A program made the position numbers and the translations under genes. A stretch of 64,000 bases of DNA from the IMG/VR virus record IMGVR_UViG_3300025319_000005, positions 1 through 64,000 of that record; one strand, 5' to 3'. Position 1 is the first letter of the stretch; every line of letters begins with the position of its first letter. The notes under the pieces are model-generated. The model searched no databases. It was not told where the DNA came from and saw only the letters and a program-made list of their open reading frames with translations. Positions 6,960-63,378 of this stretch are shown in pieces.

Positions 6960-8066
6960 TTAAGACAACACAGATTCAAATACATTCCTATTAGCTTTGA
7001 TAATGGATTTAAGCTCTGATTTTCCACGATGTATTGTTGCTTTTATTGTTCCCAAAGGAATATTAAGCTCTTCTGCGATTTCGTTATAGGATTTCTCTTC
7101 AACAAAACGTTTATTCATAATAATACGGCAATTTTCTCCCAGTTTATTTACCGCCTTATTTATTAAAGATTTTTTTTGCTCTGTAATTAATATTTCTTCT
7201 GGATTAAGTGTTCCATCATCTTTCACATCAAATGAAGAATATTCATCCCCTTCGTTTCTCATTTTCTCAGAAGAAACTCCAGCACTCAAAGAAATTGTTT
7301 CCAATCTTTTTTTACGTGTGTAATCAATTAAAAAATTAGAAGCAATACGGCTTATCCAGCTATTAAACGTAAACGTCGGTTTGTACTGGTGAAGTTTTTC
7401 GAACACTCTAACGAATAACTCTGCAGTTAGGTCATCTGCCAAATCTTTATCAAATTTTAAACTTGAAGTATATTTATAATTTATTATAGCATAATAACGT
7501 TTATATAAAACAGAAAATTTTTCTTTTTTTCCAGATAAAATTTCATTTACAGCGTTAATATCTTCTTGATCTATTTTAGAAAAAACTTTTGTAGCAACAG
7601 AATTTTCTTTCGTTGCGACTTCTTTAATTATTTGTTCAACTTCTGTTACGGTTAAAACTTCCTCTGGTTTAGTTAAAACTTCTTTAAGAACCGGTTTAAC
7701 TTCTTTTTCAGGAGTAACAGTGCTGGATTTTGCAGGTTTAACCAATTTATTGATTTTATAATTTTTTTCTTTAGAAGAAGCAAATGTAACTTCAATCAAT
7801 TTATTTAATGAATTAATTCCTGACTTTAAACAATAACCCAAAAAAACTATGTTTTCTCCACTTAAATTTAAAATATCAACTATTCCAATTCTATCATTCG
7901 ATATTTTTTTAGCACCTGATTTTGATGGGTATGACCAATCTTTCCCTTTTCGCATAGCTTTGGTAAGTGGAAATACTCTTACGTTTAACTTATCATTTTT
8001 TACTTTCCCCATTAAAGAATATAATGGAGCCAATTTGATTGCTGAAATTTTTCCTGTGTTTTTCAT
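6960..8066 (-). CDS. ECF (sigma-70 group 4) RNA polymerase sigma factor with ~160-aa N-terminal extension
   Basis: Region 2 (DLTAELFVRVFEKLHQYKPTFTFNSWISRIASNFLIDYTRKK) and region 4 (KRFVEEKSYNEIAEELNIPLGTIKATIHRGKSELK), SigW/RpoE-like. Confidence 0.9.
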   Translation of the reverse strand: MKNTGKISAIKLAPLYSLMGKVKNDKLNVRVFPLTKAMRKGKDWSYPSKSGAKKISNDRIGIVDILNLSGENIVFLGYCLKSGINSLNKLIEVTFASSKEKNYKINKLVKPAKSSTVTPEKEVKPVLKEVLTKPEEVLTVTEVEQIIKEVATKENSVATKVFSKIDQEDINAVNEILSGKKEKFSVLYKRYYAIINYKYTSSLKFDKDLADDLTAELFVRVFEKLHQYKPTFTFNSWISRIASNFLIDYTRKKRLETISLSAGVSSEKMRNEGDEYSSFDVKDDGTLNPEEILITEQKKSLINKAVNKLGENCRIIMNKRFVEEKSYNEIAEELNIPLGTIKATIHRGKSELKSIIKANRNVFESVLS

Positions 8067-15605: not shown

Positions 15606-16343
15606 TTATCTTTTATTAATTACAATAATCACAGATGCAGTGTTTGTTCCACTTTCTTTAAATTCACCTTCAGGCAATTCCTGTATTTCTGCACCAACTT
15701 CTTTGAGCCAATTTTGAAAGTTCACTTCTTTTTTGTTGGTTGATATTTGAGAATGCTTTGAAGCAATGGTTACAATTCTTCCTTCATCTTTCAGACAATC
15801 CCACATTTTCATAATGTGCTGGATATCTTGGTTTTTATTAAAAGGAGGATTTGCAACTATTTTATCGAATTTTTTCGTGCAAGTTAAAAAATCTTCACCA
15901 AGCAAAACAAAATTTTTTATATCTTTTAGAACTTTTTGATTTTCAGGCATTAATTCATAGCCAAAAACTTTTTTATCGTTACCCAAAACTCTTTGAATGG
16001 ATTTTATTATTGAACCTTGTCCGGCTTCTGGTTCGCAAATTTCATCATCTTTTTGTACATCTGCCAATTCAACAAGTCTATCAGCCAAACCTGCAGGTGT
16101 AGCATAAAATTGAAACTCTTTTTTGATATTGCGTTTTTCTCCGCCGGCAATTTGAGTAAGTAACTCAGTTGGGTCTTCGTTGAAGGTGAAACCCTGGATT
16201 TTGCCACCTGTCCATTTTCCTCCAATCAAATTAAGTGATTTCGCAACATCCATGTAAAGTTTGCGGTCAAGAGGAATAGAAGGTAGTTTTACTATTTTTC
16301 CTTCTACTGTGCACTTTTGTAGTATTTGTTCTTTCGTTTCCAT
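15606..16343 (-). CDS. N6-adenine DNA methyltransferase-like protein
   Basis: FQFYATP, EPEAGQG SAM motif, IVANPPF. Confidence 0.85.
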   Translation of the reverse strand: METKEQILQKCTVEGKIVKLPSIPLDRKLYMDVAKSLNLIGGKWTGGKIQGFTFNEDPTELLTQIAGGEKRNIKKEFQFYATPAGLADRLVELADVQKDDEICEPEAGQGSIIKSIQRVLGNDKKVFGYELMPENQKVLKDIKNFVLLGEDFLTCTKKFDKIVANPPFNKNQDIQHIMKMWDCLKDEGRIVTIASKHSQISTNKKEVNFQNWLKEVGAEIQELPEGEFKESGTNTASVIIVINKR

Positions 16344-20542: not shown

Positions 20543-21361
20543 TTATAATTTAAAAACTAATTACTTTATCAAATTCTAATGTTGCTCCAGTAATTTTCAT
20601 TTTGTCCATAATTCCTTCAGCAACAATTATATTGGGAGCTGTAATTTTATCATAAAGACTTCCTTCTCGGATTACTCTATAAATATTTTTTCCTTCATCT
20701 GATGCTGGAACAAATTCACTGTCAAAATAAACATGTTTTACTCCACCGATTAACTGAATAATTTCTTCAGGTTGTGCGTTGAATCCACTTCTATTTTTTT
20801 TAATGAATTTTGCAAGGTTAGCCATTTTTTGAATATACTTAGCATTATCCGTATTGACGACGAAGTTCATTGCATACCAAAGATAATTGTCTTTATCTAC
20901 GACATTCATTTGGAAAGTTATTTCACCTATAGGTTCAAGGTATCTTGCACCTTTATAACGTTCAGTTAAAATTTGGATACACATGTGCTTGTATACTTCA
21001 TTTTTATTGGTCGATTCCTGAATTCTGATTTTAGTTTTCATCTGTAAGTTTTTTAATTTAATCCCGCAACAGGAATATATATTTTAATCATATCCTCAGA
21101 AATAATCACCGGCATCATTTTATGTTCTTTGTACCATATGTTTGTAATGTAAATCTTTTTATCTTCAATTTCTTCTATAGAAACAATTTTATATGTTTCG
21201 GATGGCAATTCATAAGGAACGCTAACTGATTTTCCATAAGAAACCTTCATTTTTATAACCTTAGTTATGAGGGTTCCAATTACCGGCATTTTTGTTACAT
21301 CCTTGTTTTTCATAAGTAATTATTTTGTTGTAATGTACTGCCATTAGGCATATGTTATTTA

Positions 21362-36015: not shown

Positions 36016-38716
36016 TCAATGTTTTATTTTTACCAAATTTAATATTCTCCTATTATTATTTAATGTTCTCCTATTATTCCATGTTCTACATACAAATTCT
36101 CTAAACTCAATATAATTATCCAATTCCTCATAAGAAATATAAAATTCTGATACATCATAAAATATGATTTTTCTCATAGGAATAAATGTTGTCGGGTGAT
36201 AAAGATTTTCACCTATAACATAATTCGTGTTGTTTCCCATCATTGGAGATAGAACTTTACTGGCTATGTAATTAATGCCGTTTATATTTTCTGTTCCCCA
36301 AATACAAGACTTTTGATTTATAACAAACATCTCTTTATAAGCCTTTTTCCATAACTCATAAGAAATAAGCATCAAAAGACCATGCTCTGAAAAATTAGAA
36401 AAGGATAAATACTTTTCAGTTAAAACCCGGCGTGTTAATTTCATTAAAGTATTCGTAAATAATTAACTAATCCAAGTGTATGCAAATAATCAATTACAAG
36501 TGTTCTTAAATTAACACCATTCTTTAAAAAAGAAGAAATATCTTCAGTGTAACAATAAGTTGTAATGTGATAAAATGGATTCAGCTCACCCATATTTTTA
36601 TTTTTTAAAGTTAAAGTTATTATCCTGTTTTCCATGCTATCACCAATTCTATTTAATTCGCTTATGTGATATAAATCAATTTTTTGTCCAGTAACAGGAC
36701 AAATAATTTTTGAAACAATGAATACAATCCGTTCTAAATTATTTTTATTCTCAATTCTTTTAAACGTAATATCCCATAATTTATCCGGAACATCTTCTAT
36801 GTTCGTATATCTCCAAAATGGCGAGGATTTCTCTATCAGGACTTTACGAGTTAAAGTATTGCTCATCTTGTATTTTCCATTAAGATGTTTTGTGCTTGTT
36901 CCTCCAGAATATGTCAATAATATCTCTTAAAAATTCACCAGTTGAAAAATCAGATACCATTGTGTTTAACGTTGAAAATGGCATGTTAAAATAATAGTGG
37001 TTGAAAATTATCTTTCTTTTGCTATCAGAAAGTGATAAATATAACATTTCTACTTCTGAAATTGTAAAATCCTTTTCATGCATTAGTGGCGATAAAATTT
37101 CATAAGCCAGGTATTCTATTATTTTATCCGCTCTTTGAGATTCTACTACAGTATCCGATATTTTAAGCATAGAATCTCTAACCTTATTCCAGATATGCTC
37201 CGGAACCTCAAGTGGGAAATTGTATTTCCAAAAAGGTGAGGATTTTTCTGTCAAAACTCGACGTGTTAAACTTTGATGTTCCATTTAAATCATTAAATTA
37301 CAATTGTTTAGCTCAACATTACATTACTACATTCTATACATAATCCCATGTCAGGATTATTAGGATAGTCTTTTTCATATCCTATTTTCGTAAACGTCTT
37401 TTCTCCACAACAATCACAAGAAGTTAAACATTCACTCACAAACATACTACCTGAAATCCTAATATGATAACCTTTCTTTTTTAATGTACCTATAGAGCTG
37501 CCTTTTTCTATTAAAACATGACGTGTTAATGTGTTGTTCATGTTATTTCTCTCCTTAAAAATTTTGAACTACATTTCATTGAATATTCCCACAGTATCTC
37601 AATAGTTTCTTTTAACATAAAAGAACTCTGATAGTGACGCTTATTACATAACAAATTCATAGACACTTCAAAATAACAATCGTTGTCGAAAATTATATCC
37701 CTATAAGAATAAGCGAAATTGTTATTTACGAATTTTATAGGTGAAATAGTAAAATCCTCTTTTATGAGCGGTGATAGAATTTGACCGGCAATGTAGTGTA
37801 TTAATTTATCAGCTATTTTTGTTTCACCCGTATCATTAAACATGTCTTGAATTATATTAAAATGCTTCAGCCACAATTTCTCTGGAACCAAACTTGGATT
37901 CGGATATCTCCAAAAATGTGAGGATTTCTCTATCAGGACTTTACGAGTTAAAGTGTTCATGTTATTTTCCATTTAAAATATATTCTATATTATACTTTAA
38001 TCCAATGTAACTATATATATCTGATAAGTCTACTAATGTTTCACGCTCAACTTTTAACGACTTTATTTTTCTATTGATTCCAGCAAACTCTATTAAATGA
38101 TGTGCCGGACGAATCATAGTTGTGGGTCGTATATTTGGATGTTTTGTTGTTGTTATTGCATAAGGAACATAAGTTATATTGTAATTTCTCATTTTTAGCA
38201 TAGGAGATATGATTTTTTCTATAACGAATTCCAATACTATGATACCATTATTTAAATTTCCTTTACTGGCTAAAATTTCAAAATTAAGTTCTTCTGCGAC
38301 TTTTATCCACATAATCCAAGGCACGTCATCCACATTTGAATAACGCTCGAAAAGTGAGGATTTCTCTGTAAGGACTTTCCTGGTTAAAATATTATTCATC
38401 ATAAAGATAAAAATTTATCAAATCCCATACTACATCTTTCACATAATCCAATATCGGTAATTCCAAAAAAAAATGACTCATAACCAATTTTTACTTGTGT
38501 TCTTCTTTTGCAGAAATCACAAAATTCCAACTCAGCTCTTGAAAAAATTTTTGTACCAAAAGGATGTATTTTTTGAAAATAACCTCTATTCTTTAATTCA
38601 CCTACAAAAGAATAAGATTTTTCAATTAAGACTTGACGTGTTAAGGTGTTGCTCATTTTTATGTTTCTATGCGTGTTTTTTAAATGCAAAGGTAGAAAAA
38701 TTATTGCACAAAACAT
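36016..38716 (-). CDS. Cluster of seven tagged proteins: five SSPFWRY-type paralogs (36016, 36444, 36880, 37538, 37962) and two Zn-finger paralogs (37308, 38399)
   Basis: LTR(K/R/H/Q)VL(I/T)EK near each N-terminus; VP..LW...ILSP in the first group; CD.C...KIGYE...GLC..CS in the second. Confidence 0.8.
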
Positions 38717-44029: not shown

Positions 44030-44581
44030 TTATTTGATTTGTAAAAAATTTGTGAGCACTGGATGGTCAAGGTTTGGTTTTACCAATTTTAGATGTGCGT
44101 TAGATAAACGACCCATTCTCCATTTACCAGCACCAGGTGTATAGTCCTTAAGTTTTATATTTGTTTCCGATATGTTTACACCATTACCAGAAGATGTATT
44201 TGGCGTGTATCCATTCAAATTTATAAGTGTTTCCAACGTTTGTGCCGCATTGGCGATTGGAATTATTGGTGTATATTCATCCAATCTTATATGTGTTTCT
44301 AATACGTCTTTTATAAACGACTGAGTTTTAGAATAACTAAATTTATATTTGTCCTCAAAAACCGACCAAATTAGATCGAATCTCACATAAAAATACCTGT
44401 TTTCTGTTTCCTGTTGAAATAATAATAAGTCATTTTTCACATAAAAAATATAATGTGGATGTTTGTCTGAAATTTTTAATTCACACCCCTCTATAAAAGA
44501 CAGGAAGAAATCCTCCATTTCGTGTTTGATGTGAAATTTCTCAAATAGGACTTTCCGAGTTATGGATAGGGTCGTTATCAT
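44030..44581 (-). CDS. Family A paralog translating degenerate array D
   Basis: LETHIRLDEYTP-10aa-LETLINLNGYTP-10aa-SETNIKLKDYTP-10aa; TACATTTG host promoter box upstream. Confidence 0.85.
   Translation of the reverse strand: MITTLSITRKVLFEKFHIKHEMEDFFLSFIEGCELKISDKHPHYIFYVKNDLLLFQQETENRYFYVRFDLIWSVFEDKYKFSYSKTQSFIKDVLETHIRLDEYTPIIPIANAAQTLETLINLNGYTPNTSSGNGVNISETNIKLKDYTPGAGKWRMGRLSNAHLKLVKPNLDHPVLTNFLQIK
44136..44303 (-). repeat. Degenerate CRISPR-like array D: 3 repeats, two 30-nt spacers, in frame
   Basis: 36-nt repeats at 44268, 44202, 44136 with an exact 66-nt period. Confidence 0.6.
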
Positions 44582-44851
44582 ATTTTATCATATTACCAGC
44601 AAATGTAAGAAAATTATGTTAATATCTTGGATTTGTGGAGACAGAAAAAACCATACTTGAATTTTGTGACAGGATTTTACGTTTTACGTGAAATAAATAA
44701 AAGTGGACATTATTAGAATTTTTTGTGTTAATGTTTACTTTTCTTATTACTGTTTTCAATATTCTCAATAGTCTTTGAATAATTTCATTTGTTTTGAGTT
44801 TTAAATTCTTTTTTCTTTCGTTTCTTTAATCCCATAAATTACTTGTTCTAT

Positions 44852-46375
44852 TTATAAATTTTTTAATAGGAATTCTTTTTTAGATAATTTTGCATTTAAC
44901 TCACTTTCAATTTCAGCTTCCAATCCTTGAATTAATTCTCCGATATTAGGTAGTTTATCTTTAATGACATTCAAACTACCCAATTCTTCTATCTCCGGAA
45001 TTCCGTTTACCATAGATGAGGAAATAATGTCTTCAGATGGATTAAAACCATATTGTCTTAACTCTGTAATTAATTGAATTAGATTTTGCTTGTCATCCTC
45101 ATTGTCGTGTATGATATTTGGAATAATAATATAAGCATATGGCTTGTTCAATTTTTCCAATTCATGAGGTAGAATTTCACCAGACTCAATTCTTTTTCTA
45201 TCTTCCTTGTCAAGTCTAGCAGCTCTTCCAAAAGTTTGTAAAAACTTGCTCTTATTTAAAGTACGTAAAGGCATAATTCCGGTAAAACCACTAACATCTA
45301 TTCCTTCGGCCAATATATCATAATGTAATACAATAAGCTCTTTTTCAATATCTGAGCCATCTGATTTCAAACGCTTTAAAAATTCTTGCCTACTTACTTT
45401 TTCACCATTAATATCATTACCAATTTCGTCATTTGAAGCAACAGCATAAACATTAACTCCACTATTTCTCAAATTTACATACTCAACACTTTCAAGAAAT
45501 TTCTTAATATCTTGAGTTCCTTTTACTGAAATAAGAATTTTTGGTTTTAATTTCGTTAATACTTTTTTATGCTGGTAAAATGATTCCGATATAATCAAAC
45601 TCAAACTCTTATTATAATCATCCGAATGATAAAACCCATCTGTTTTTACAACATGGAGCCTCGGTCTAACCATTTTACCAAGTTCTATAGCTTCTCTTGG
45701 AGTCATTGAATATAAAACATTCCCATATAAGTCTATATTATTCATTCCACGTCCTTTATCTGAAGGAGTGTGAATAGTTGTAGCTGTAAAGAAATAACTC
45801 CTTGGAGAAGTTAAAGTATGAAGAATATCGTGAAACTGCTCTTGGACAAGATAGTGTGCCTCATCATTTAAAACTATTGAAATAGGTTGTTTTTGACTTT
45901 TCCTCGCATCTTCTATCTTGTCGGCTGAATTATATGTAGAAAAGAATATAAGCGGTAAATCTTGCGATTTTGATTTTTCTATCATGTATTTAATTCCTTG
46001 AACAGATGTTCCGGAACCAATCTCTGAAAAAGGAATGTTGTTTCCATCTAAATTAGAATGAATACGCATTTCTTCTAATTCATTTTCTTCTGTCTTTCCT
46101 CCTGAGTGTACAAACATATAACGAGCTTCAATACCATTAGAAATTAAGAACCCATACACTTCTTTTAATAATTGATAAGTAAGAATAATGCGCGGAGCAT
46201 TTACAACATACATTCTGAACTGATTAGGGTTCATTATTATATCATTTGCTATAATTGCAGCTTCACAATAAGTTTTTCCTACTCCAGTAGGTAAACAGAT
46301 AATTCCTTTTGAATTATAAAATGTCATCGTTACTGAATCTTTTTGATATCCATATAGTTTCTCTAATACATTCAT
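44852..46375 (-). CDS. SF2 (DEAH) helicase/ATPase, restriction-Res-subunit-like
   Basis: LPTGVGKT Walker A, NDEAHY, TAT, ILAEGIDV, QTFGRAAR. Confidence 0.9.
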   Translation of the reverse strand: MNVLEKLYGYQKDSVTMTFYNSKGIICLPTGVGKTYCEAAIIANDIIMNPNQFRMYVVNAPRIILTYQLLKEVYGFLISNGIEARYMFVHSGGKTEENELEEMRIHSNLDGNNIPFSEIGSGTSVQGIKYMIEKSKSQDLPLIFFSTYNSADKIEDARKSQKQPISIVLNDEAHYLVQEQFHDILHTLTSPRSYFFTATTIHTPSDKGRGMNNIDLYGNVLYSMTPREAIELGKMVRPRLHVVKTDGFYHSDDYNKSLSLIISESFYQHKKVLTKLKPKILISVKGTQDIKKFLESVEYVNLRNSGVNVYAVASNDEIGNDINGEKVSRQEFLKRLKSDGSDIEKELIVLHYDILAEGIDVSGFTGIMPLRTLNKSKFLQTFGRAARLDKEDRKRIESGEILPHELEKLNKPYAYIIIPNIIHDNEDDKQNLIQLITELRQYGFNPSEDIISSSMVNGIPEIEELGSLNVIKDKLPNIGELIQGLEAEIESELNAKLSKKEFLLKNL

Positions 46376-47448: not shown

Positions 47449-48924
47449 TTAATCTAAAAACTCTTTCCAAAAGTCTTTGCGGAATGTGGATATGACCTTA
47501 CGCTTATATCTATGTCCCATTGTTCCGTCACAAAAACTCATTAATTTAATAAATTTCTCATTTAACATAGATTTCTGGATGTTTTCAAAATTTATAGGTT
47601 CATCAACAATGGCATAAGCAAATTGAGTTAAACCGTATTCTCCTGTTTTATCTATTATTGGTTTTGAAATTCCATTACTCCATATTACCTTAGGTGTATT
47701 AAAATGACCATTTTTAGATAATGACCAAAATAGATTTACCGTTCCATCTTTTAATATAGTATAGACACAAGGGTATTTAAAATCTTCTGTTTTTTCTTTT
47801 GACATGTGTTTTTTGTCACTACCATAAGCAGACCGACTATACAACACCTCAACTTTTTCTTCTCCCTCTTTTGCTATTAACTTTTGTATTTCATTAAACA
47901 TTCCATTAGGAATAAATTCCATATTTGAAATATCTAATTTTTCAATAATTCCATCTTGACATTTAATTGTTGTTATTGTATTATTTGAGGGAGAGTTTTT
48001 AATGCAATAAAAATCAAAAGTAGTTTGTACGCCAAACATTTTAACACCATCTTCTCTGTTGTGTAAATTTAAACTTAATATTTTCTTTGACCTTAATAAA
48101 GTTTGAATTGTTTTAAATCCACCATCAAAATCTCTCCAATTGCTAGGGTGAACACCAACAAAATAACCAGCTTCAACCAAACAACTTTCAATTGATTTTT
48201 TAACGAATTTATCCCAAAGTGGTTGTGACTTTTTATTTCCTTCTTTAAGCTCTTGATACGGAGGATTCATCACAATAACATCAAATTTTTCAATTCCCCA
48301 TATCTCTCTCGTGTGTTCATCAAATTTTTCATCCAAAAACGAACCATTATATATATTCAAAGAATATTCATCATTAGGATCAAAAGCACAAAGGAATAGA
48401 AACATATTTTTAGCTTGAAGTTCACCAACGTATAATTGATTTTCTACTATGTGTTTATATCTTAATTCCTCATCTGGTTCAAATTCCTTAAGACCATACA
48501 TAAGTCTATTTACAATAACACTTGAAAAAATACCACAACCGTTACAAGGGTCTAAGAATTTCAATTTAGGATTTGACCAAACTTCTTTAGGTAAAGTATC
48601 AAGCATATCCTGTACAAGAGAAATTGGCGTCATAACCTCTCCGAAGGCTTTTTTCTCCACTTCTCCTACTTTAACGTATTCACGTAGCATTTTGACTATT
48701 TCTTTGCTGTAATGATATTTTCCAATACTTTCATCCTTCATCATGTTTTTTACCTTGATGAATAAATCTCTATCACCATCCAAAATAGATAAAATAGCCA
48801 TTCTTTTCTTGCTGGTACTTAAACCCTCAAGTGTTATTTTAATGTCTTTATCAATTCCTGACACTTCATCAATCATCATTTGGTCGATTAATGTTTCAAA
48901 TTGATTTTTCTTTGCGTTTGTCAT
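47449..48924 (-). CDS. N6-adenine DNA methyltransferase (Eco57I/type IIG-like M+TRD)
   Basis: GEVMTP, FLDPCNGCG, FDVIVMNPPY. Confidence 0.9.
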   Translation of the reverse strand: MTNAKKNQFETLIDQMMIDEVSGIDKDIKITLEGLSTSKKRMAILSILDGDRDLFIKVKNMMKDESIGKYHYSKEIVKMLREYVKVGEVEKKAFGEVMTPISLVQDMLDTLPKEVWSNPKLKFLDPCNGCGIFSSVIVNRLMYGLKEFEPDEELRYKHIVENQLYVGELQAKNMFLFLCAFDPNDEYSLNIYNGSFLDEKFDEHTREIWGIEKFDVIVMNPPYQELKEGNKKSQPLWDKFVKKSIESCLVEAGYFVGVHPSNWRDFDGGFKTIQTLLRSKKILSLNLHNREDGVKMFGVQTTFDFYCIKNSPSNNTITTIKCQDGIIEKLDISNMEFIPNGMFNEIQKLIAKEGEEKVEVLYSRSAYGSDKKHMSKEKTEDFKYPCVYTILKDGTVNLFWSLSKNGHFNTPKVIWSNGISKPIIDKTGEYGLTQFAYAIVDEPINFENIQKSMLNEKFIKLMSFCDGTMGHRYKRKVISTFRKDFWKEFLD

Positions 48925-48956
48925 GAGAAATGGTTTTTGTTTAATTAATTATGTTA

Positions 48957-48993
48957 TAACGTACTATACGAATTTTAAAAGAGAGGTGTTACA
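48957..48993 (-). promoter_or_regulatory. ECF-type phage promoter copy 15 (heads the MTase-nuclease-helicase cluster)
   Basis: TGTAAC-N17-CGTATAGTACGTTA. Confidence 0.8.
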
Positions 48994-48994
48994 A

Positions 48995-50066
48995 ATTTCA
49001 TTGGTCTTCGGCACAAGTTAATGATAAATCATAATATAAAACACAAATATATAAATTTCTGATTGGTTTTTACTGGATTTTACTATAGTATATTTTTACA
49101 CTTTTTTAAACATAAACAGAAGTATGATTTACTATCATTTTCCATGAGAGAAAAGTAGATACTTTTATTGAGCTTTTTAATACTAAAATTAAAGAGGATG
49201 AAATGGGATTTATGTAGGATTTTACGTGAATGTCTACTTTTTCTAAATTTGTAAGAGGTTGGTTGTCAGGATTTTACATATAATTATATAACTTTAATAA
49301 AAACACGTAAAATAATATTAAAACATTGATACTGGTTCGGTTCACATTGTGAGGTTGTAGCTCTGTCCATTTATCAACCAACGAAATTGAACTGATTTAT
49401 GGGATTTAATAGAAATACGATAAATCGTATAAGTAAAATCCTGACATACTTTTCACAAATCCTATCACACTCCACAACGTCCTATCTAAAGACATTTCAG
49501 AACATTTAAAAAAATTTTAAAAATATAAACGTTAAAAGTGGGTTTTTGTGGTAAAAAGTGGGAGCCATAATTTAGCAGGACAATAGTAGGATTTTACTTG
49601 AGCTGAAAGTGAATAAAAGCTCTGGTCGGTAAAATCCTAATTATCCTCGTGTAGTCGTTTGTTGTCGGATAGCACAGTACTTTCCTTTCGTACCATAGGA
49701 TTTTACCATTCTGGGAGAAATTATTTACTTGTAGTCGGATAAATTGTTGATAACTTTATTTTTATCAATATCGGTAGGATTTTACGAGTACAAAATTGTT
49801 GATAACTATTTCTATTAAACAAAATGCTGGTTATAAGACAAGTAAAATCCTGGCACGATTTTATCTGGCACGTAAATTGATATTAGTAAAATCCTGCTAC
49901 CAATTCCCAAAGTGAATCTTATTCGTTTTCTTGTGATAAGTGTTAATAACTTTGTTAATAGAATGCAACATTTTGTAGGATTTTACGTTTAACTGTATAT
50001 GAACGTGTTTCCATCGCGTTTGGTTTTGGCCTACTGAGTTTAAATTAAAGAGGTTCCTGGTTTTGT
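48995..50066. repeat. 1.1-kb non-coding island with 10 exact AGGATTTTAC copies in both orientations; candidate origin or protein-binding platform
   Basis: Forward at 49216, 49268, 49588, 49697, 49776, 49977; reverse at 49433, 49629, 49842, 49886; TTGTTGATAACT twice (49744, 49796). Confidence 0.75.
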
Positions 50067-50139
50067 TTTGTTTGCTCCTTCACCGTGTCCGCTACTCTTA
50101 ATTTACTCAGTGGGCTTTTTTATTGTTATATTTGTGAAA

Positions 50140-50550
50140 ATGATAAAAAGTCTTGAATATATTAAAATTCACATATTAAAAGAAGGAGAAAAGCCTGTTT
50201 TATTATCTGAGTTAGAAAACAAGATAGTTGCTTGGGCATTACATCTCCCTGAAAAAATACAAATTTCTCATTGCAACTCTAAAGAAAATTCAAATCCAAT
50301 AAAATTCATTGGAGGGAGAGAATACCGTTCCCTTGGAGATACCTGCAGAATGTTTTGTAAAATGAGACTACAAAATAGAATGTTTGATTACTTTTTCTGG
50401 GATGGAATTGTAAAAGTAATACATAATGATTATGATTACTTTAGTGAAGAATACTATGCTTTTAAAAATAGTTTTTATTATTATATTGTCACAGGAAGTT
50501 ATAATCACCGGATGGTGTTAATAGAAAAATTCAATAGGGAGAAATGGTAG
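50140..50550 (+). CDS. Hypothetical protein with C-terminal HRMVLIEK tag (start revised from 50068)
   Basis: TATATTTG box at 50127 then ATG at 50140; divergent from the non-coding island. Confidence 0.6.
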   Translation: MIKSLEYIKIHILKEGEKPVLLSELENKIVAWALHLPEKIQISHCNSKENSNPIKFIGGREYRSLGDTCRMFCKMRLQNRMFDYFFWDGIVKVIHNDYDYFSEEYYAFKNSFYYYIVTGSYNHRMVLIEKFNREKW

Positions 50551-52380
50551 GATTTTACCGGTTAATAATTATAAAACTTATTTTTGGGATATCTTAAAAA
50601 CTACCAGCATCATGTAAGTGATTACCAGAATCGTCATAAACGTGTGTCTTCAACATTGAGCCACCTTTTGTATTTGCTTCTTTAAATGCTTCTTCTTTGG
50701 TTTTAAAATCTCCCTCTATCCAATCTGAGCCATCGAATGTATCAACTCCTACAACTCTGAATTTACCTTTTGGTGCTTTGAAATCTTTTATAGTTAACAT
50801 AAGGATAAGTTTTAAATTTATGATATATATTATATTTTATTTAAGGAATCAGGATTTTGCCCAGAGGAAAATCCTTTTTATCTATCTCAACTATGATACA
50901 TGTCATTATAATCAGATATTTACCACCGTACAAAAAACAAGTCCCTCACAATCATTAAGATGATGTAGAACATTGGCTGAAGATTCTTCTAACAATGACC
51001 TGGTTCTTCCAACTGAAAGATGAGGTAAAGTACATAAAGTGGTTGTAAAAGAAACCTTTTTCCCAATTGAATGCATTTCATCCCAATCATTGGGGCATTT
51101 CTTTTTTAACTTAGTTACTGCACTAAGCATTTGTTTCTTTTGTGTAAAATGAGCTGTTACGCGAATTGCTTCCATGTTATTCCAAGTTTAAGGTTCCTAA
51201 CAATGACAGGTTTTTACATACCTCTTCTGTTTTAATGTAAAATCCATCTTTACCTTTTTTAAATATCCCAAGTTTTGTGGACATCTTATTTATTAAATCA
51301 ATGAAGACCGGCTTTTTAATGTCGTCATATAAGCTCTCTAATAAAACAATCCCTTCTTCATTATTTGAAATTGAAATTACATCTTCGATATTGTTATATT
51401 TAAATTTCATAGTTAAGAATATCTAATTTAAAAATATTGGATACAAATCATTATCTGACTCAGGGATATATAAAAACACATTTTGCATGCCAGTATCTTT
51501 ATTTATCTCGTCGATGTCATTATCAATACATTTATATGCTTCTTTGGTACCTTCTCCGGTTCTATCAAAGAACCTTTCGGCATTTTTGATATCTCTTACT
51601 AATTCGATTTCAATTTTTTTGTTTTCCATTTGTTTTAATGTTTTTGTTCTTGTCGTTTTTATTTTCAGTTCTGCCGGACCATTGAGTCGTTCCATCGTTT
51701 CTTTGTGTGAATTTTGGTTTTGTATCAAGACTGGTCATCTCACCTAGGTGAAAATCGTTATATTTATCATCCAGAACCTGGTTCTTTCTCTCATCCGCTT
51801 TTCGAATTCGTCTAGAAATTAACACACCGACTAATCCTGCAATAGCCATCATTGCGATTAATATTATATTTGTGTTCATTACATGTTCTTGATTTGGTTG
51901 GTTTATATATTAAACGTATTGTACCAGGTTGAATGTTGCATAAATATAAAAAGTTTTTTATTGAAGTTAAAAAATAATATTTATGACCCGCTGGACATTC
52001 GTTTCAATAATAGCGAATTGTCAACCATAAAAGACTGAAAATCAGAAGTATCAAAGTCATCTTTCAATTGTGGTATATCATAAGTGTCATTCACGTTGTT
52101 TTTGATGTAATCAATCAACACTTCGAATGTATTTGATTGACATGTTGCCTTAATTGCTGTCAGTCGTTGTTCAACTTCTAAAAACCATTTAGGTTTCTTT
52201 TCTTTTAAATAGTTCATAGCTACAGGTAAGTGATGTGTCATCAAGTTGTCATCGCAAATATGATTTAACATTAAATAGACATCATCTATTTTTGTTGATA
52301 ATCTCCCATCTACTATGGAAAATAATTGAAGTAAATTAAATTGTTTTGTCATTTTATTGTTGTTTTTAGGTTTATATATT

Positions 52381-52827: not shown

Positions 52828-54101
52828 GGTTATATTTTTTCAGTTAAAGTTATTCTTCAATAAGCTACTTTAAAATCAAATAGTTATGAATTTAATTATA
52901 CTACAATCAATTCAAACATATCAAATAACTCAATTTCTGCCATGCTCCATTCTATATCAAATTTTTCTAATATTGATTTAGGAATGCTAATATTTTTCCC
53001 ATTAAAATATTTTAACAGTTTATCTCTAAAGTTTTTATCTTTTATTAAGTCAAAAGATAAATTTGGTACTAATGCAGCTGTTTTTTTAAGTGCATCATTT
53101 TTTTTCGATTTAGGGAGAAATAATAATTTTTCACGATTGTTTAAGGATTTATTTTCTTTGTTAAAAATTAAATTTTCGTCAATATCTGTTATAATGTAGC
53201 TATCTTCTCCAGATAATTTCAAAAACAACTTTGTTTTATTTGTTGTGCTCTGTTTTTGAACTCCAATTAGTCTTTCTAAATAACTTATTTTAAAAGTTTT
53301 GATTTTGTTATTTAATTCTATAATTTTTTTTTCAACTTCTTTTGTTATTAATAATCCGTCAAGATAAAACGAACTTTCTTTCTTTGTAACTAAGTGAAAT
53401 CCCATTAATTCAAAGTCTGTGAGTGTTCCATCTTCGAGAAGTGTTCCGGCTCCAAGTGGAAGTAAAGAAAATTCATCAAGTTTTTCTTTCGTTATGTTAT
53501 TTTTTGTAATGTAATCATTATTTATCTCAACTTCAAGGATTAAAATATCTTCTTTGGATAAGTGGGCAGAAATGATTTCACCAACTACATCTCCTATAAA
53601 TTTAACTTCTTCCTGAACTTCACCAGCATCTTCAAAAATAGATGTGTTTAGTTTTCTTTGATTTATATTATAAATAAATTTCTCAACTTCATTTTTAGGA
53701 AATTTCCTTTCGTTTAAATTAGCAACATCACATGTTAAAACTTCAAAGTAATGAAGTAAAACTTGAGTTTGTGTTTCTTTTGCTGAGTTTTTCATGGTTA
53801 TATTTTTTTTAGTTAAAGTTTTACTTTAAGTTACCCTCCTCTTGACCCGTTAGAAATCAATAGATTATCAGTTTTAATTTCCTTCGCTTAGTAAAATGTA
53901 AAATCCTAATTATATGCAAGTTCAGGTACCTTCAATATCAAGTAGTTATAAAGAAGTTGTAAAAATGAATACTCATTATCAATTAGTTACGAGCTAAAAA
54001 TTTTCAATAATCATTCCTATGTTAAAAATCAATTAGTTACGCAACACTGCCAGCTGTACATTCATCATATTGTTTTATTCATAATGTGATATTTTGTTCT
54101 A

Positions 54102-54183: not shown

Positions 54184-54240
54184 GATATACGTAAAATCCA
54201 ATTGAATTTCTGTCACGAAAAAGAATTAAATTAGTGACAG
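54184..54240 (+). repeat. 57-bp hairpin element, near-identical inverted copy at 61227-61281
   Basis: GATATACGTAAAATCCAATT...CTGTCAC-GAAAA(A)GAATTAA(A)TTA-GTGACAG in both copies. Confidence 0.75.
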
Positions 54241-55174
54241 GATTTTAGATTTATATTTCGTATATCAATAATTTTTAAAAAACGGTTTGAGAAACGCCAG
54301 GTCAAAAAAAATCCCTGGCAGAAATTACCAGAGAAAAAGTATCATATATCAGGATTTTACATTTAGATTAGTATGAGTATCAGGATTTTACGCTCTTGAG
54401 TCGAGTTCCTTTTTAATTTTAGCAGCTTCTTCGAAGGCTTCAGTTGAGACCATTATGTTCATGTGACGTATTAGTTTGTCTGTGGAAATGTTTTTATAAT
54501 CAAATGCGTTGATTTGTAATTGGTCGGTATCACGATATAATAGATTATCTATTTCATTATCTTCCGGGTCTTCGTCATCATAATACTCATCTTCTTCGCT
54601 TCCATCTTTAGAAGGTTCACCTGGTTGTAATCCAAAGTTTATCTCCTTCATACCTATATCTATAAGTATTTGGCGTCCTAATTGTGGTTCTTTATTATAT
54701 TCGTATGTAGACTCAGCGAGTTCAGAAAAACCTTCCGGAAGTATTCCGTCAGCTATTCCGGATTCGTCTGATAGGCATCCTTGGGAATCGTAATAGGTAC
54801 GTGGAGTGATTAGAAAAAAATAATCTCCATCATTATTTGATAATTGAAAATAAAAATCTGATGCTTTCATGTAAGATTAAACGGAAAATCCTGCAATTTG
54901 TTTCTTTAGCTTTTCCTCTCCCTTAGTTTTAATATCGCTTCTCCCTATAAATTTCCTATTAGTCATTGTTTTATTTTCTTTCTTTTCAGATTGTGTAACT
55001 TTTTTGCTTGGAGTGAGGTTGTTATTAAACTTATCTTCTGCAGGCGTTTCTGGTTTATGTTTCTTATTATCAATGATATAACAGTCCCAACAACAGTATA
55101 AGTTTCTCCCTGATTTAACCGGTTTTCCACAAGCTGAATTGTGACAGGTTGGAATTATTTTGTCTAATGCTTTC

Positions 55175-56158: not shown

Positions 56159-57236
56159 ACGTTTGCAAATGTAGTAAATAATTATTTAGTTTAAACAAAA
56201 AGTCCAGTGATTATAATTTTTCACTGGACTTTCGTAGGGAGAATTAATCCTTCATCTTTTTGACTTTAACCTTTTCTTCGTCATCGTCATTTAAATAATC
56301 TTCCGCATCTTCGGTGTCATGACCATGTTTGTTCAGGCAGAAGAATTCTGGACCAGAACCAACTGCGAATAATCTTTCTACACAGGTTTTTACATCCATT
56401 ATTTCACTATCTGTTGTGATTGTAACGTCTCCAACATTATGACCTTCAGTTATGTCATAATTGATTTTTTCAAGGTCAGTTGAAGAATAAGGCTCCTCAG
56501 ATAAAATTTCAATTTGAACTACCGTCCGGTAGAATTTACGTTTACTTAATGACATGATGTTTTGTTTATTTGTGTTTAATTTATTTTTCTACTTCCTGTT
56601 TATAAATTTCAAGCATTTTATCTATTGCTTTATTCTCAACAGCATTTTTATTTGAGGATTTGTCAAAAATTCCTTTCAGAGCTATCTCTCCAACTTTTTT
56701 GCAAGGATAATATGTATCTTCACCTTTCGCAAGTTTTTCTCCGAACCGGTTTCCTTTTTGAGGCTCTTTTTGAAATCCTTTATACAATTCAAGAACCATT
56801 TTATCAAGATCAATTACATATGCGTATTCGCAAAAAAGAGAGTCTTTAATAAAATTAGTTCCATCCAGCATATGCTCAACTTTTCCTGACATTATTTCCG
56901 GTATATATTTTGCACCTTGTAATTCTCTTAATAAGGCATACCATTCTTCTGATTTGCCGGTTGATACACCACTATTAAAAAACTTATTGTATTTTTCCTG
57001 AATTAACTTTGATGGCTTTTTATTTTCATCTACAAGTTCAACTTTTTTACAATTCTTTTTGAACTGGTCCCAGCCATTGATTTCATCAATTTTCTGCAAT
57101 TCTATTACAACTTCTTCACCAACACCGCCGTCTGGATATCCATCAAATTGATTGTAAAATCCTTTGGCTTTTTCATCCTCAATGATTATAACTGCGCTTC
57201 TTGTTCCCATTTTATTTATGTGTTTTGGTTTATTTT

Positions 57237-57941: not shown

Positions 57942-57978
57942 TAATGTGCTATACAAATTTTAAATGAGAGGTGTTACA
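57942..57978 (-). promoter_or_regulatory. ECF-type phage promoter copy 18
   Basis: Consensus; encodes the VTPLI* end of ORF 57960-58967. Confidence 0.8.
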
Positions 57979-59193
57979 ACTTTGGATAATTTATTCGCAA
58001 ATACTTCATTGATTATTTCTTCAATGTATTCTTCTTCTTTTGTTAATGTTTCTTTACCGGATAGTTTTTGTTTGGCAACAATAAGCTTTTTTAAGTGTTC
58101 TTTGCTATTGTATTTTCCACCAATAGGGAGAAGTATGCCGAATCCTCCAAAAAGTATTTCTAATTCGTGTGTTGAACTCATTGTTCCTTCGTGAAATGAA
58201 GCTCCGTAAAGAATACAACAATTATATATTCCATTTAGATAATTCTCAATAGAAATCTTTTGTTCTTTTTTTGTACTTCCCTCAAGAGAATCTCCAAAGT
58301 GTCTTCCGTCAGAAGATGAAATCCAATTAAACATTCTATGGGAAGGAATCCCTCTTTTTCTTAATCCGGCTTCAATTTGTTTATCATTTACTGCAGTTCT
58401 CCCTGAAGAATGTCCAATCCATCCGTGAGCATATCCTTTTGAAACGTATTCTTTTAATTTTGGTGAGTTAAAAACTTCATCTGAAAACCCACCTTGATAT
58501 AATTTCGGATTTGCCGTTAAAATATCTAAATCCATCCAAAGAACCAATTTTTGTTTCTTTGCTTCCTTTTGAGATTTAATTTTTTCTCTTTCCCAGAAAG
58601 CTTTTTGTGCTGGTATGTTTCTGTCTTTTTTAAAACCTTTATCGTAATAGGATTTTACAAGAGAAATGAACTCTGAAGTGCTTTGAAACTCAGCATCCCG
58701 TCCGAATATCTTATTACTATGTAACCCTTTGTTATAGAACGTTTTATCAGCCTCAAGGTAAAATCCTACATATTTTGAGTCACCGTATATTTCAGCTATT
58801 GTTTCTCCGTTAAGTCCTGGAAATTTTTTGGATACGATTATTGAATTCAGTTCTATTTTGAAATCAATTTCTTTTGTATCGGTAACAATAACAAGAAATT
58901 CATCCATAGATGATGAAGACGCGAAACAAGAGTGAATGTGTTTAGTTATTACGATTGGCTTTTTCATTGTGTTTAGTTTTTAACCGGTTTGAATTCACAA
59001 AAATCTTCAAGGTCTCTTAAATCAATTCGACCAAATTTGACTGAGCTATAATAGCCTTGTCTTTCAAATCTCTTAACCCAATTTTTAAAAGCTTCAAGAG
59101 TTGCTTTTAACCCTGTGTATGTTTTACCCATATCAATAGAGATTCCATCTGGGGAGATTACATCATATTTTTTTGAGTTTTCCATTGTTTTCA

Positions 59194-60409: not shown

Positions 60410-60600
60410 ATTATTTAAACAAACGTAATGTTTTATATAATTCTCCAATCTGAGCTTTTAGAATACGTTGTTCGTGTGCAATAGTATTTATTTGACGCTT
60501 ATTTGCGGAAAGTTTATTCTGAGCAGTTAATAACTCTCTGGAAACCATTTGCTTACACTTGTCGAAAACTTCTTTCTTTACATTCATTTTGTTCAGGATT

Positions 60601-61068
60601 TTACCGGTTTATTTTTGGTGGAGTTGTTTTAAAAGCTTTTTTATATATTTCTTTTGCTTGTTTCCAATCCTCTGCACCTCCGTCACATGAAATTTCAGTT
60701 TGTGGAAAATGGTGTTTTAATCTTAACATTGAAATTTTAACCATTAAATCGTATGGTTTACGTGCACTTTTACAGAACTCAAATATTAGTCCATTTTCTG
60801 CACGTCCTTCACTCTGTCTTTCTATCACAAAAGTTTCGTGGCTCATATCATCTTTGTTTTCGCCGTTGAATATAATAATATCATCGGTAAATTTAGGTTC
60901 TCCGGTTCCATCTCCGCCGGCCAATACAATTGATTTATCAATTTGATAATCAGCTGATTTTGAGCGGTCTGGTAAAAGTCCGGCTACTGTTTTTAATTCC
61001 TCTGATAGAATTTTGAATTTTTCGCTGTCCAGTTTTGCTGGAGTTTTGTAGTAGTTCGTATATCCGAT
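60601..61068 (-). CDS. Conserved-looking phage protein, probably longer than the track ORF and beginning at an ATC
   Basis: Frame open from ATC-GGA-TAT-ACG (xGYTNYY) to ...FCKSARKPYD; no in-frame ATG before the TTG at 60924. Confidence 0.5.
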   Translation of the reverse strand: MGYTNYYKTPAKLDSEKFKILSEELKTVAGLLPDRSKSADYQIDKSIVLAGGDGTGEPKFTDDIIIFNGENKDDMSHETFVIERQSEGRAENGLIFEFCKSARKPYDLMVKISMLRLKHHFPQTEISCDGGAEDWKQAKEIYKKAFKTTPPKINR

Positions 61069-61155: not shown

Positions 61156-61226
61156 AAAACAGAAAACAAACATATCTGGTGTAAAATCCTAAAGCAAATA
61201 TATATACGCAAATTAAAACTATATTT

Positions 61227-61281
61227 CTGTCACTAATTAATTCTTTTCGTGACAGGAAATGAATTGGATTTTACGTATATC
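61227..61281 (-). repeat. Second copy of the CTGTCAC/GTGACAG hairpin element
   Basis: Reverse complement matches 54184-54240; flanked by GTAAAATCCT at 61181 and 61290. Confidence 0.75.
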
Positions 61282-61399
61282 CTTATTAGGTAAAATCCTT
61301 CAGCTGGTGCCTGCTGGCCAGGGATTTGGATTTGAGTTAAAAAGAAAAGAGCCGAACATTTAATGCCCGGCTCTAAGCTCGTCGTGTTTAAATAGGATT

Positions 61400-61591
61400 T
61401 TACTTCTTTGCAGATGTAGTATCCACTTTTACTTTAGTAGAATCAACAGCACCAGTGCTACCTGTTGATACAGGAGCTACAATAATGGTGCTATCAACTG
61501 CTGTTGCTGTTACTTCTTCAGTCTTAGCGGTGTTGCAAGAGGAAAAAATAAACGCTGCTAAAACGGCTGTTAATATCAATGTTTTTTTCAT
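61400..61591 (-). CDS. Small Thr/Ser/Val-rich lipoprotein
   Basis: MKKTLILTAVLAAFIFSSC lipobox. Confidence 0.6.
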   Translation of the reverse strand: MKKTLILTAVLAAFIFSSCNTAKTEEVTATAVDSTIIVAPVSTGSTGAVDSTKVKVDTTSAKK

Positions 61592-63171: not shown

Positions 63172-63378
63172 AATATTATTCGACTTGTAAAATCCTATCA
63201 AGAATCATTCTCTCAACATTCCCATTCTTTATTTTGTTCGCCCACATACCGGCAATTGCTATAAACTCATCCAATGTATCGGCTTCATCAATTTCTTCTG
63301 TTATTTGTTCTAAATCATCTCCCTCTAAGGTGATGGATTTTTTGTATTCTGATTTCAATTTGTCTAATGTCATAGCGT

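What the first reader, a model, noticed from the sequence alone, without database searches (positions are those of the whole stretch)
48995..50066. Iteron-like AGGATTTTAC cluster at a strand switch: candidate replication origin or nucleoprotein hub
Seen: 10 exact copies in 771 bp (6 forward, 4 reverse) in the largest non-coding stretch, plus two AAATTGTTGATAACT boxes 52 bp apart (TTATCAACA, one mismatch from the DnaA box TTATCCACA) and a divergent gene on the right. About 10 more exact copies occur at 44671, 50549, 53898, 54351, 54382, 60595, 61181, 61290, 61394 and 63187, four overlapping stop codons. A rough expectation for this 10-mer is below one copy per window. I noticed none left of 44 kb but did not search exhaustively. 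Inference: binding sites for a phage initiator, partition/organising protein or repressor.
Basis: partly seen in the sequence, partly recalled or inferred. Interest (0 to 1): 0.62.

Follow-up and report, generated by a model that had tools for sequence, protein, structure and literature searches.

The report
Shared phage DNA-word binding-site array
A 1.1-kb gene-free stretch of a large groundwater phage is packed with ten copies of one 10-letter DNA word that also marks the phage's promoter and terminator junctions and recurs in unrelated small phages, so it is most likely a docking array for a still unknown DNA-binding factor; nothing shows it to be a replication origin.

Summary
AGGATTTTAC occurs 10 times in 49216-49986, 25 times in the window (0.39 expected) and 57 times in the 212.6-kb phage genome. 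49 of the 57 lie between 37 and 99 kb, and 42 of 57 are intergenic. The true word is W-GGATTTTAC.

The T-form sits at a fixed place in the 19-nt spacer of 11 promoter-like elements. These otherwise copy the phage's ~57 ECF-sigma-type promoters, which have a 16-nt spacer. The A-form stands alone in either orientation, often just after terminators and upstream of promoters.

The same word, with the same second box (AAAGTTATYAACA), forms clusters between terS and terL in three small-phage lineages. No detectable protein is shared between any of them and this phage.

Closer relatives of the window's phage lack the word and the gap. GC skew shows no turn here, no initiator gene is adjacent, and the DnaA-like box deviates at a key position.

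Best reading (about 0.4): a nucleoprotein hub of binding sites for a transcription-linked factor, possibly host-encoded. An origin remains possible (about 0.2). The binder and the function are inferred, not shown.

The parts
48925..50067 (.). Largest ORF-free gap of the genome (1143 bp); holds the word array
49216..49225 (+). AGGATTTTAC copy 1
49268..49277 (+). AGGATTTTAC copy 2
49433..49442 (-). AGGATTTTAC copy 3; 19-nt inverted repeat with copy 2
49588..49597 (+). AGGATTTTAC copy 4
49629..49638 (-). AGGATTTTAC copy 5; with copy 4 an inverted pair 31 nt apart (hairpin-capable, z -4.3 as DNA)
49697..49706 (+). AGGATTTTAC copy 6
49776..49785 (+). AGGATTTTAC copy 7, between the two identical box-2 copies
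49842..49851 (-). AGGATTTTAC copy 8
49886..49895 (-). AGGATTTTAC copy 9
49977..49986 (+). AGGATTTTAC copy 10
49074..49083 (+). TGGATTTTAC, the T-form of the word (eleventh site of the array)
49741..49760 (-). Box 2 copy 1 (consensus AAAGTTATYAACA on the - strand); a 19-mer identical to one in small phage G001
49793..49812 (-). Box 2 copy 2
49938..49956 (-). Box 2 copy 3 (TGTTAATAACTTT form, identical 13-15-mers in L011 and L017)
49659..49671 (+). Further repeated box TTGTNGTCGGATA, copy 1
49729..49741 (+). Further repeated box TTGTNGTCGGATA, copy 2
49531..49562 (+). Two GTWAAAAGTGGG boxes 20 bp apart
48962..48992 (-). ECF-type 'E-class' promoter (GTAACA, 16 nt, CGTATAGTAC) driving the methylase operon; left edge of the gap
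50028..50122 (+). Long hairpin followed by a T run (terminator-like) just before the + strand ORF
47449..48924 (-). Flanking gene: N6-adenine DNA methyltransferase (Eco57I/N6_Mtase domains)
50140..50550 (+). Flanking ORFan (P0001, 136 aa), no family or fold match; its stop overlaps a word copy
37064..37073 (-). Word copy inside ORF 36880-37284 (coding; paralogue of the next)
37749..37758 (-). Word copy inside ORF 37538-37972 (same frame as 37064)
44671..44680 (+). Dispersed word copy between genes 44030-44581 and 44852-46375
50549..50558 (+). Dispersed word copy overlapping the stop of ORF 50140-50550
53898..53907 (-). Dispersed word copy, 102 nt upstream of gene 52896-53795
54351..54360 (+). 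Dispersed word copy in an intergenic module, upstream of a T element
54382..54391 (+). Dispersed word copy overlapping the stop end of gene 54388-54870
57154..57163 (-). Word copy 47 nt inside gene 56581-57210, downstream of an E promoter
58649..58658 (+). Word copy inside gene 57960-58967
58758..58767 (-). Word copy inside gene 57960-58967
60595..60604 (+). Dispersed word copy
61181..61190 (-). Dispersed word copy 24 nt upstream of the -35-like box of an E promoter
61290..61299 (-). Dispersed word copy 8 nt downstream of the T element's GTATATC
61394..61403 (+). Dispersed word copy overlapping the stop end of ORF 61400-61591
63187..63196 (-). Dispersed word copy 14 nt upstream of the -35-like box of an E promoter
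54184..54266 (-). T element: 83-bp imperfect palindrome ending in GTGACA, a 19-nt spacer holding TTGGATTTTA, then CGTATATC
61199..61281 (+). T element, second copy in the window
6960..8066 (-). Phage ECF-type sigma factor gene (Sigma70_r2 + r4_2), presumed reader of the E and T promoters

Best explanation
The gap 48925-50067 is a dense array of docking sites for one sequence-specific DNA-binding factor that reads W-GGATTTTAC. It is combined with a second conserved box (AAAGTTATYAACA) and at least two further repeated boxes. It is a nucleoprotein hub whose main link is to transcription control, not a classical iteron origin.

Shown:
- The word is about 60-fold over-represented, strongly intergenic, and used in both orientations without conserved flanks.
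- Its T-form occupies a fixed position in the over-long 19-nt spacer of 11 promoter-like elements. Their -35/-10-like boxes match the phage's ~57 promoters with a 16-nt spacer.
- Its A-form recurs just after terminators, about 140 bp upstream of those elements, and directly upstream of some 16-nt-spacer promoters.
- The same word and box 2 cluster between terS and terL in small sigma-encoding phages. In G001 the word also lies in the divergent control region. No detectable protein is shared between any of these phages and this one.

Inferred:
- The factor binds single words as a monomer and abutting inverted words as a dimer.
- Sitting in the 19-nt spacer, it gates those promoters, either by occlusion or by MerR-like realignment.
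- The 11-site array plus box 2 folds into a higher-order complex. This complex would act as a control switch or a high-avidity sink for the factor at the head of the methylase-helicase operon and the small + strand islet.

The hub could additionally serve replication, as promoter-type origins do in T4. Nothing here shows that.
For: - Over-representation and map.
- No conserved flanks.
- Intergenic bias: 42/57 overall and 32/47 outside the array, against 21% non-coding (P about 1e-11).
- T-form in a fixed promoter context. Spacer exactly 19 nt in 11/11, against 16 nt in 56/59 E promoters.
- In the T elements the word-bearing arm is invariant while its palindromic partner arm varies. So the word is kept for itself, not for pairing.
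- Recurrent order terminator, word, T element, E promoter.
- ECF sigma gene in the phage.
- Same word and box 2 between terS and terL in G001/L011, L014/16/17 and L141.
- The word is the top over-represented 9-mer there, with the same W at position 1.
- Perfect 20-21-bp palindromes made of two words (G001, L141).
- No detectable protein shared between G000 and any of the small phages.
- Orientation relative to transcription differs between phages (18:10 reverse-biased in G000 50-92 kb, 12:3 forward-biased in G001). This argues for a DNA-level, orientation-free site.
Against: - No binder is identified, and no expression or binding data exist. Only DNA runs hold the phage, and the contigs are identical, so they show no variation.
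- Ten sites in 770 bp with no gene to regulate inside is more than a normal operator needs.
- Several copies lie inside real genes.
- In L017 the word abuts the start codons of terS and terL. This could point to an RNA-level or translation role instead.
- The host is unknown, so the 'host factor' step is pure inference.
- Only four phage lineages in 2.9 million viral contigs show the word in clusters.
Confidence: 0.4

Rival explanations
1. Replication origin. The words are iterons for an initiator, box 2 is a DnaA-type or bending-protein site, and the AT-rich left part (48.9-49.3 kb) is the unwinding element.
For: - It is the largest non-coding gap of the genome and lies at a local strand switch.
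- It holds several different repeated boxes in one region.
- Box 2 is one mismatch from a DnaA box.
- The left 300 bp is 75-77% AT against 71% for the genome.
- A helicase gene lies 2.5 kb away.
- P4 ori/crr uses 8-bp repeats in both orientations (own knowledge).
Against: - There is no GC-skew turn.
- The region is not among the most AT-rich windows.
- The sites are 10-bp words with irregular 41-165-bp spacing and no helical phasing.
- No initiator gene is adjacent.
- Most copies are dispersed at promoter/terminator junctions, and one form is part of a promoter class.
- Relatives lack any equivalent gap.
- In the small phages the cluster lies in the packaging/late region, and G001 and L017 have a separate iteron-like repeat upstream of their sigma gene.
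- The phages share no detectable initiator.
- Box 2 always has A at the C position that DnaA boxes require.
Confidence: 0.2
2. Packaging recognition site (pac/cos-like). The words are small-terminase binding sites and box 2 is a bending-protein site, as in lambda cosB or P1 pac.
For: In three small-phage lineages the cluster lies exactly between terS and terL and spills into both genes. Lambda cosB and P1 pac combine short repeated elements in both orientations with an IHF site (own knowledge).
Against: - In the window's phage the large terminase gene is at about 125.6 kb, 75 kb away.
- No Terminase_2-type terS is found there.
- 47 further copies are dispersed over 60 kb.
- The small-phage TerS proteins are only about 31% identical yet would have to read an identical 10-mer.
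Confidence: 0.08
3. RNA-level element. Forward and reverse words are complementary seeds. They would build long-range helices in a non-coding transcript, or mark processing or translation-control sites on mRNAs.
For: - The order of words in the array allows nested forward/reverse pairing.
- The 49588/49629 pair and the T element fold well.
- A + strand transcript would end at the 50028-50122 hairpin.
- In L017 the word abuts the ATG of terS and terL; in G000 it lies 17 nt before tRNA-Cys.
Against: - Two words abut with a 0-1-nt gap in G001 and L141, which cannot form an RNA hairpin.
- The strand bias relative to transcription is opposite in G000 and G001.
- There is no Rfam match even at E = 1.
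- In T elements the partner arm varies without compensation.
Confidence: 0.1
4. Selfish or structural repeat (REP/MITE-like) without a dedicated binding factor.
For: In an Elusimicrobia MAG the same 10-mer is the 3' end of a REP-like interspersed repeat, 62 copies against about 2 in the control. The ~300-bp intergenic modules of G000 are clearly duplicated units.
Against: - In the phages only the 10 bp are conserved; the flanks are unrelated.
- The word is kept exactly across phages whose TerL is 37% identical.
- It sits at a fixed position in a promoter class.
- That MAG uses Shine-Dalgarno sites whereas the phage does not, and no spacer-like match links them.
Confidence: 0.07

Closest known systems
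Iteron-type origins, especially phage P4 ori/crr (8-bp type I repeats bound by the alpha protein)
   Same: Many copies of a short word in both orientations in a non-coding region, with extra copies at a distance and accessory boxes.
   Different: No initiator gene nearby, no regular spacing and no skew signal. The word is dispersed over 60 kb at promoters and terminators, and is shared with phages that have no detectable protein in common with this one.
T4 middle promoters (MotA box) and the promoter-type origins ori(uvsY)/ori(34)
   Same: A 9-10-bp phage-specific word is tied to one promoter class within an early-gene block. A promoter region could double as an origin.
   Different: The word lies in the spacer directly against the -10-like box, not at -30. 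Most copies have no promoter boxes at all and occur in either orientation. No MotA/AsiA homologues were seen.
MerR-type promoters with 19-20-bp spacers
   Same: The 11 T elements have the same -35/-10-like boxes as the 16-nt promoters but a 19-nt spacer that holds the recognition word.
   Different: The word is not a palindrome centred in the spacer. No MerR-family gene was identified. Function is untested.
Lambda cosB (R sites plus IHF site) and the P1 pac site (hexamer repeats plus IHF site)
   Same: Short repeated elements in both orientations plus a second box. In the small phages the cluster lies next to the terminase genes.
   Different: In the window's phage the array is 75 kb from terL and the word is genome-wide.
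Arrays of short boxes read by small multifunctional regulators (pSM19035 omega heptads, P2 Cox boxes)
   Same: One short box in direct and inverted copies serves several promoters and a higher-order nucleoprotein site.
   Different: Those boxes are contiguous and the binder is encoded next to them. Here the sites are 41-165 bp apart and the binder is unknown.

Membership tests
Iteron-type replication origin | Tandem or regularly spaced repeats (usually 17-22 bp) bound by an initiator encoded nearby | tested here: not met
   The sites are 10-bp words in mixed orientation with 41-165-bp spacing. The flanking genes are a methyltransferase and an ORFan.
Iteron-type replication origin | Adjacent AT-rich unwinding element | tested here: inconclusive
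   48.9-49.3 kb is 75-77% AT against 71% genome-wide, but it is not among the 15 most AT-rich 200-bp windows.
Iteron-type replication origin | DnaA boxes matching TTATNCACA | tested here: not met
   All copies here and in the small phages read TTATYAACA, with A at the required C. The consensus is from my own knowledge.
Iteron-type replication origin | Strand-composition switch at the site | tested here: not met
   Cumulative GC skew falls monotonically through 49-50 kb. This test is weak for a phage with one dominant coding strand.
Iteron-type replication origin | Supports autonomous or initiator-dependent replication | not testable with these tools
   Needs a host and a wet-lab assay.
Promoter (sigma-dependent) | Fixed orientation and distance relative to the downstream gene or transcription start | tested here: not met
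   For the A-form, orientation is mixed and there are no conserved partner boxes within 25-40 nt.
Promoter (sigma-dependent) | Fixed register with -35/-10-like boxes | tested here: met
   Met only for the T-form: 11/11 copies read GTGACA, 19 nt including TTGGATTTTA, then CGTATAT.
pac/cos packaging site | Lies in or next to the terminase genes | tested here: not met
   terL is at about 125.6 kb and no Terminase_2 terS is found. The feature is met in the small phages G001, L017 and L141.
pac/cos packaging site | Physical genome ends map to the site | not testable with these tools
   Only assembled contigs are available for the holding runs.
Known RNA family | Match to an Rfam covariance model | tested here: not met
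   No match at gathering score in the window, nor at E = 1 in 48900-50200.

The most novel reading that the evidence does not exclude
The word and box 2 form a portable cis-module read by a single host (or co-infecting phage) factor. Unrelated phages of the same groundwater host, a phage of at least 212 kb and 32-kb sigma-encoding phages, have each wired it into their timing circuits. One factor would then synchronise or cross-regulate different phages in one cell. In the large phage it would gate a whole class of ECF-sigma promoters through an over-long spacer.
Probability: 0.15. Interest if true: 0.8.

Novelty: new variant of a known kind. Interest (0 to 1): 0.55.

Why it matters
If the reading holds, an uncultured large phage carries three regulatory layers that can be read from sequence alone:
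- about 57 ECF-sigma promoters;
- 11 variants of them gated through a 19-nt spacer;
- a 10-bp word that also forms a 1.1-kb array.

The same word, kept letter for letter in phages with no detectable protein in common with this one, gives a concrete handle for fishing out an unknown DNA-binding factor, and with it the unknown host. It also allows a test of whether different phages in one host share a control signal.

If the array proves to be an origin after all, it would be an origin type shared horizontally between very different phages.

Tried and rejected
- **Nucleotide similarity to known phages:** none.
- **Rfam:** nothing at gathering score or at E = 1.
- **Literature search for the 10-mer:** only primer coincidences.
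- **Genome-contig scan for word pairs:** chance hits and tandem repeats, with no host clue.
- **Elusimicrobia MAG with 62 copies:** followed up and set aside. The word there is the end of a REP-like repeat. The MAG uses Shine-Dalgarno sites while the phage does not. Box 2 is not enriched in it, and there is no spacer-like match to G001. 150 other genomes of that phylum are not enriched.
- **Metagenome-contig scan for word plus box 2:** found only the phage itself and L141's twin.
- **Reads:** no RNA run holds the phage. The laid contigs were identical to the window, so they gave no variation or ends.
- **Shared binder:** blastp, phmmer and small HMMs found no protein shared between G000 and all of the word-bearing small phages. 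The only pairwise hits were one XkdF-like domain, a GIY-YIG endonuclease and one other pair. The sigma factors of the small phages align to the G000 sigma at only 25-28%.
- **Bacteroidota-type TAnnTTTG promoters:** not enriched.
- **Sigma-54-like TGGCATAGTTATTGC:** present in L011 and L017, absent from L141 and poor in G000. Judged by eye.
- **IHF consensus in box 2:** fits one copy only (by eye).
- **Distant TerL relatives:** no analogous clusters.
- **E- and T-class patterns elsewhere in IMG/VR:** single chance hits only.
- **Flanking ORFan P0001:** no family, and no usable fold or feature match.

Full report
**Observation**

The pattern search finds AGGATTTTAC 25 times in the window against 0.39 expected (largest shuffle 3). 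Ten copies lie at 49216-49986, six forward and four reverse. The sequence and the ORF lists show that 48925-50067 is ORF-free. At 1143 bp it is the largest gap in the whole record.

Five more were missed (37064, 37749, 57154, 58649, 58758), so the word is not absent left of 44 kb. The two AAATTGTTGATAACT boxes lie at 49741 and 49793 and are unique in the genome.

**Context**

The window is the first 64 kb of a 212,632-bp virus record (29% GC, CheckV 81% complete). It is held by groundwater, sediment and soil metagenome runs and by no RNA run. The laid contigs were identical to the window, so they gave no information on variation or ends.

- Genes from 1 to 92 kb are almost all on the - strand.
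- Start codons are not preceded by Shine-Dalgarno sequences.
- The helicase next to the array is about 30% identical to helicases of T4-like cyanophages.

Genome-wide the word occurs 57 times. 49 copies lie between 37 and 99 kb, and most of the rest lie beside the tRNA genes at 173-177 kb. Nothing beyond the 10 bp is conserved around it. 42 of 57 copies are intergenic although only 21% of the genome is non-coding. Outside the array the figure is 32 of 47 (P about 1e-11).

**The word is W-GGATTTTAC and has two uses**

Single-mismatch counts show that only position 1 is free: TGGATTTTAC occurs 25 times against 0.9 expected. Eleven of these T-forms sit in one fixed context, GTGACA, 19 nt ending in TTGGATTTTA, then CGTATATC. 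This is the right arm of an 83-bp imperfect palindrome. That 'T element' folds well (z -4.15). However, across copies the word-bearing arm is invariant while the partner arm varies. The word is therefore kept for its own sake, not for pairing.

A much larger class, the 'E' promoters, has 59 matches to its -10-like core, almost all pointing with the genes between 5 and 93 kb. In 56 of them GTRACN lies 16 nt upstream of NGTATAGTAC. One of these, at 48962-48992, drives the methylase operon at the left edge of the gap.

By my own knowledge this AAC/CGT architecture is that of ECF-sigma promoters (for example B. subtilis SigW and SigX). The phage encodes an ECF-type sigma at 6960-8066. Its nearest phage relatives are annotated 'sigma-W factor' in crAss-like and Prevotella phages.

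The T elements are thus E-type promoters whose spacer is 3 bp too long and holds the word. This is the layout of promoters controlled through the spacer. That interpretation is an inference.

**Grammar of the stand-alone A-form**

In at least six intergenic regions the transcribed strand reads, in order:

1. terminator;
2. GTAAAATCCTGA;
3. about 135-190 bp;
4. T element;
5. about 90-120 bp;
6. E promoter;
7. gene.

Other copies lie 14-24 nt upstream of the -35-like box of E promoters. One lies 17 nt before tRNA-Cys. Relative to local transcription the reverse form dominates in G000 (18:10 in 50-92 kb).

**The same word in unrelated phages**

A scan of viral contigs for word pairs and for inverted pairs found three further lineages:

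- G001/L006/L011, a complete 32,329-bp phage;
- L014/L016/L017;
- L141.

Each has 9-15 exact copies. GGATTTTAC is the most over-represented 9-mer in L141 and L017, again with A or T before it.

In all three the main cluster fills a non-coding gap between terS (Terminase_2) and terL, and spills into both genes. In G001 a further copy lies in the divergent control region. Two words abut as perfect 20-21-bp palindromes in G001 and L141.

These clusters also carry box 2. A 19-mer is identical between G000 (49743) and G001, and 13-15-mers are shared with L017. On the gene-sense strand of the small phages the box reads AAAGTTATYAACA.

TerL of L141 and G001 is only 37% identical, yet the word is identical. 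G001 and L017 each encode two sigma-like proteins. They have no E or T promoters. Their sigma aligns to the G000 sigma at 25-28%.

No protein is shared between G000 and all the small phages by blastp, phmmer or small HMMs.

Conversely, five relatives of G000 (helicase 60-75% identical) have no copy of the word, no E promoters and no large gap beside the conserved methylase/helicase genes.

**What this means**

The following features point to a protein-recognition word acting on double-stranded DNA and tied to transcription control:

- it is exact, short and free of orientation;
- it prefers intergenic DNA;
- it pairs into palindromes;
- it sits at a fixed place in one promoter class;
- it marks control regions and late-operon heads in other phages.

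The 11-site array with box 2 and two more repeated boxes would be its highest-density docking region, a nucleoprotein hub. Because the phages share no candidate binder, I infer a host factor or a fast-evolving small phage protein. This is the weakest link of the argument.

**Against the origin reading**

- There is no GC-skew inflection.
- AT content is ordinary.
- Spacing is irregular and unphased.
- No initiator gene lies beside the array; the right-hand ORF is an ORFan.
- Box 2 consistently deviates from the DnaA consensus at a critical base.
- Relatives have no syntenic equivalent.
- G001 and L017 have a separate iteron-like repeat (TTATTGAAGTTAA) upstream of their sigma gene.

None of this excludes an origin. 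Promoter-type origins exist in T4 (own knowledge). I keep the origin at about 0.2.

**Other rivals**

- A pac site fits the small phages but not G000, where terL lies at about 125.6 kb.
- An RNA-level role is suggested by words abutting start codons in L017 and by foldable inverted pairs. Abutting palindromes, opposite strand biases and the lack of compensation argue against it.
- A REP-like selfish repeat is suggested by an Elusimicrobia MAG with 62 copies. That case looks coincidental: the flanks differ, the MAG uses Shine-Dalgarno sites, and nothing links it to the phages.

**Verdict**

The finding is real and more than chance. The 'replication origin' half is unsupported. The function of the array and the identity of the binder remain inferred.

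Noticed in passing
window 5829-63587, continuing to about 93 kb of the genome: 59 matches to the core of one very strong promoter-like motif (GTRACN, 16 nt, NGTATAGTACATTATAA). 56 have the full architecture, and almost all point with the small - strand genes. The architecture is that of ECF-sigma promoters.
   Followed up: partly
window 6960-8066 (-): Phage-encoded ECF-type sigma factor (368 aa, Sigma70_r2 + r4_2, long N-terminal extension). Nearest phage relatives are annotated 'sigma-W factor' in crAss-like and Prevotella phages.
   Followed up: partly
window 54184-54266 (-), 61199-61281 (+), and nine more copies up to 93.8 kb: 83-bp imperfect palindromes ('T elements') with the E-type boxes but a 19-nt spacer. 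They fold as long hairpins (z -4.15). They may be gated or divergent promoters.
   Followed up: partly
genome 54-93 kb (e.g. 66755-67075, 75235-75590, 80025-80410, 83200-83560): Duplicated ~300-bp intergenic modules: bidirectional terminator, the word, a short hairpin, T element, then E promoter. They recall the promoter/stem-loop cassettes of T4-type hyperplastic regions.
   Followed up: partly
genome 100-212 kb: (A)CCTATTTAT is enriched about 14-fold within 60 nt upstream of genes in the second half of the genome. It may be the late-promoter word.
   Followed up: no
window 9519-10855 (-), 10965-11795 (-), 15606-16343 (-): A tyrosine recombinase (XerC/D-like) lies next to a GIY-YIG endonuclease. 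There are two DNA methyltransferases here besides the one flanking the array.
   Followed up: no
genome 173.6-177.1 kb: 18 tRNA genes in total. The word lies 17 nt before tRNA-Cys and 8 nt after tRNA-Thr, and there are three tandem copies at 177032-177094 upstream of a tRNA block.
   Followed up: no
window 36880-37284 and 37538-37972 (-): Two paralogous ORFs carry the word in the same reading frame (…DFT…). These copies are probably coding coincidences kept by paralogy.
   Followed up: no
window 50028-50122 (+): Long hairpin plus T run directly before the ATG at 50140. A + strand transcript from the array would end here.
   Followed up: partly
L019+L020 (G001) 20910-21303; L017 6130-6420: G001 and L017 carry a second repeat, TTATTGAAGTTAA (4-6 copies), in the non-coding region upstream of their sigma gene. 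It is a candidate origin or operator of its own. G000 has a single copy at 51955-51975, which is chance level.
   Followed up: partly
L019 1655-11497 (-): G001 encodes a 3280-aa protein, a third of its 32-kb genome, with only pentapeptide-repeat matches.
   Followed up: no
G008 (Elusimicrobia MAG CG1_02_37_114), e.g. L154-L173: A REP-like interspersed repeat ends in TAATCCTTCAGGATTTTACTTG (62 copies), often a few nt before start codons and once before the 16S rRNA gene. It is probably unrelated to the phages.
   Followed up: yes
L090 (510-bp contig); L098 4262-4502: Tandem arrays that contain the same 10-mer: a 12-bp period in a marine cyanobacterial-bin contig, and a 21-bp period in a low-GC contig binned with Limnohabitans. 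Their nature is unknown.
   Followed up: no
L011 907-922; L017 1623-1665: TGGCATAGTTATTGC, a near-consensus sigma-54 -24/-12 element, is conserved inside the word clusters of two small-phage lineages. It is absent from L141 and weak in G000 (49851-49880).
   Followed up: no
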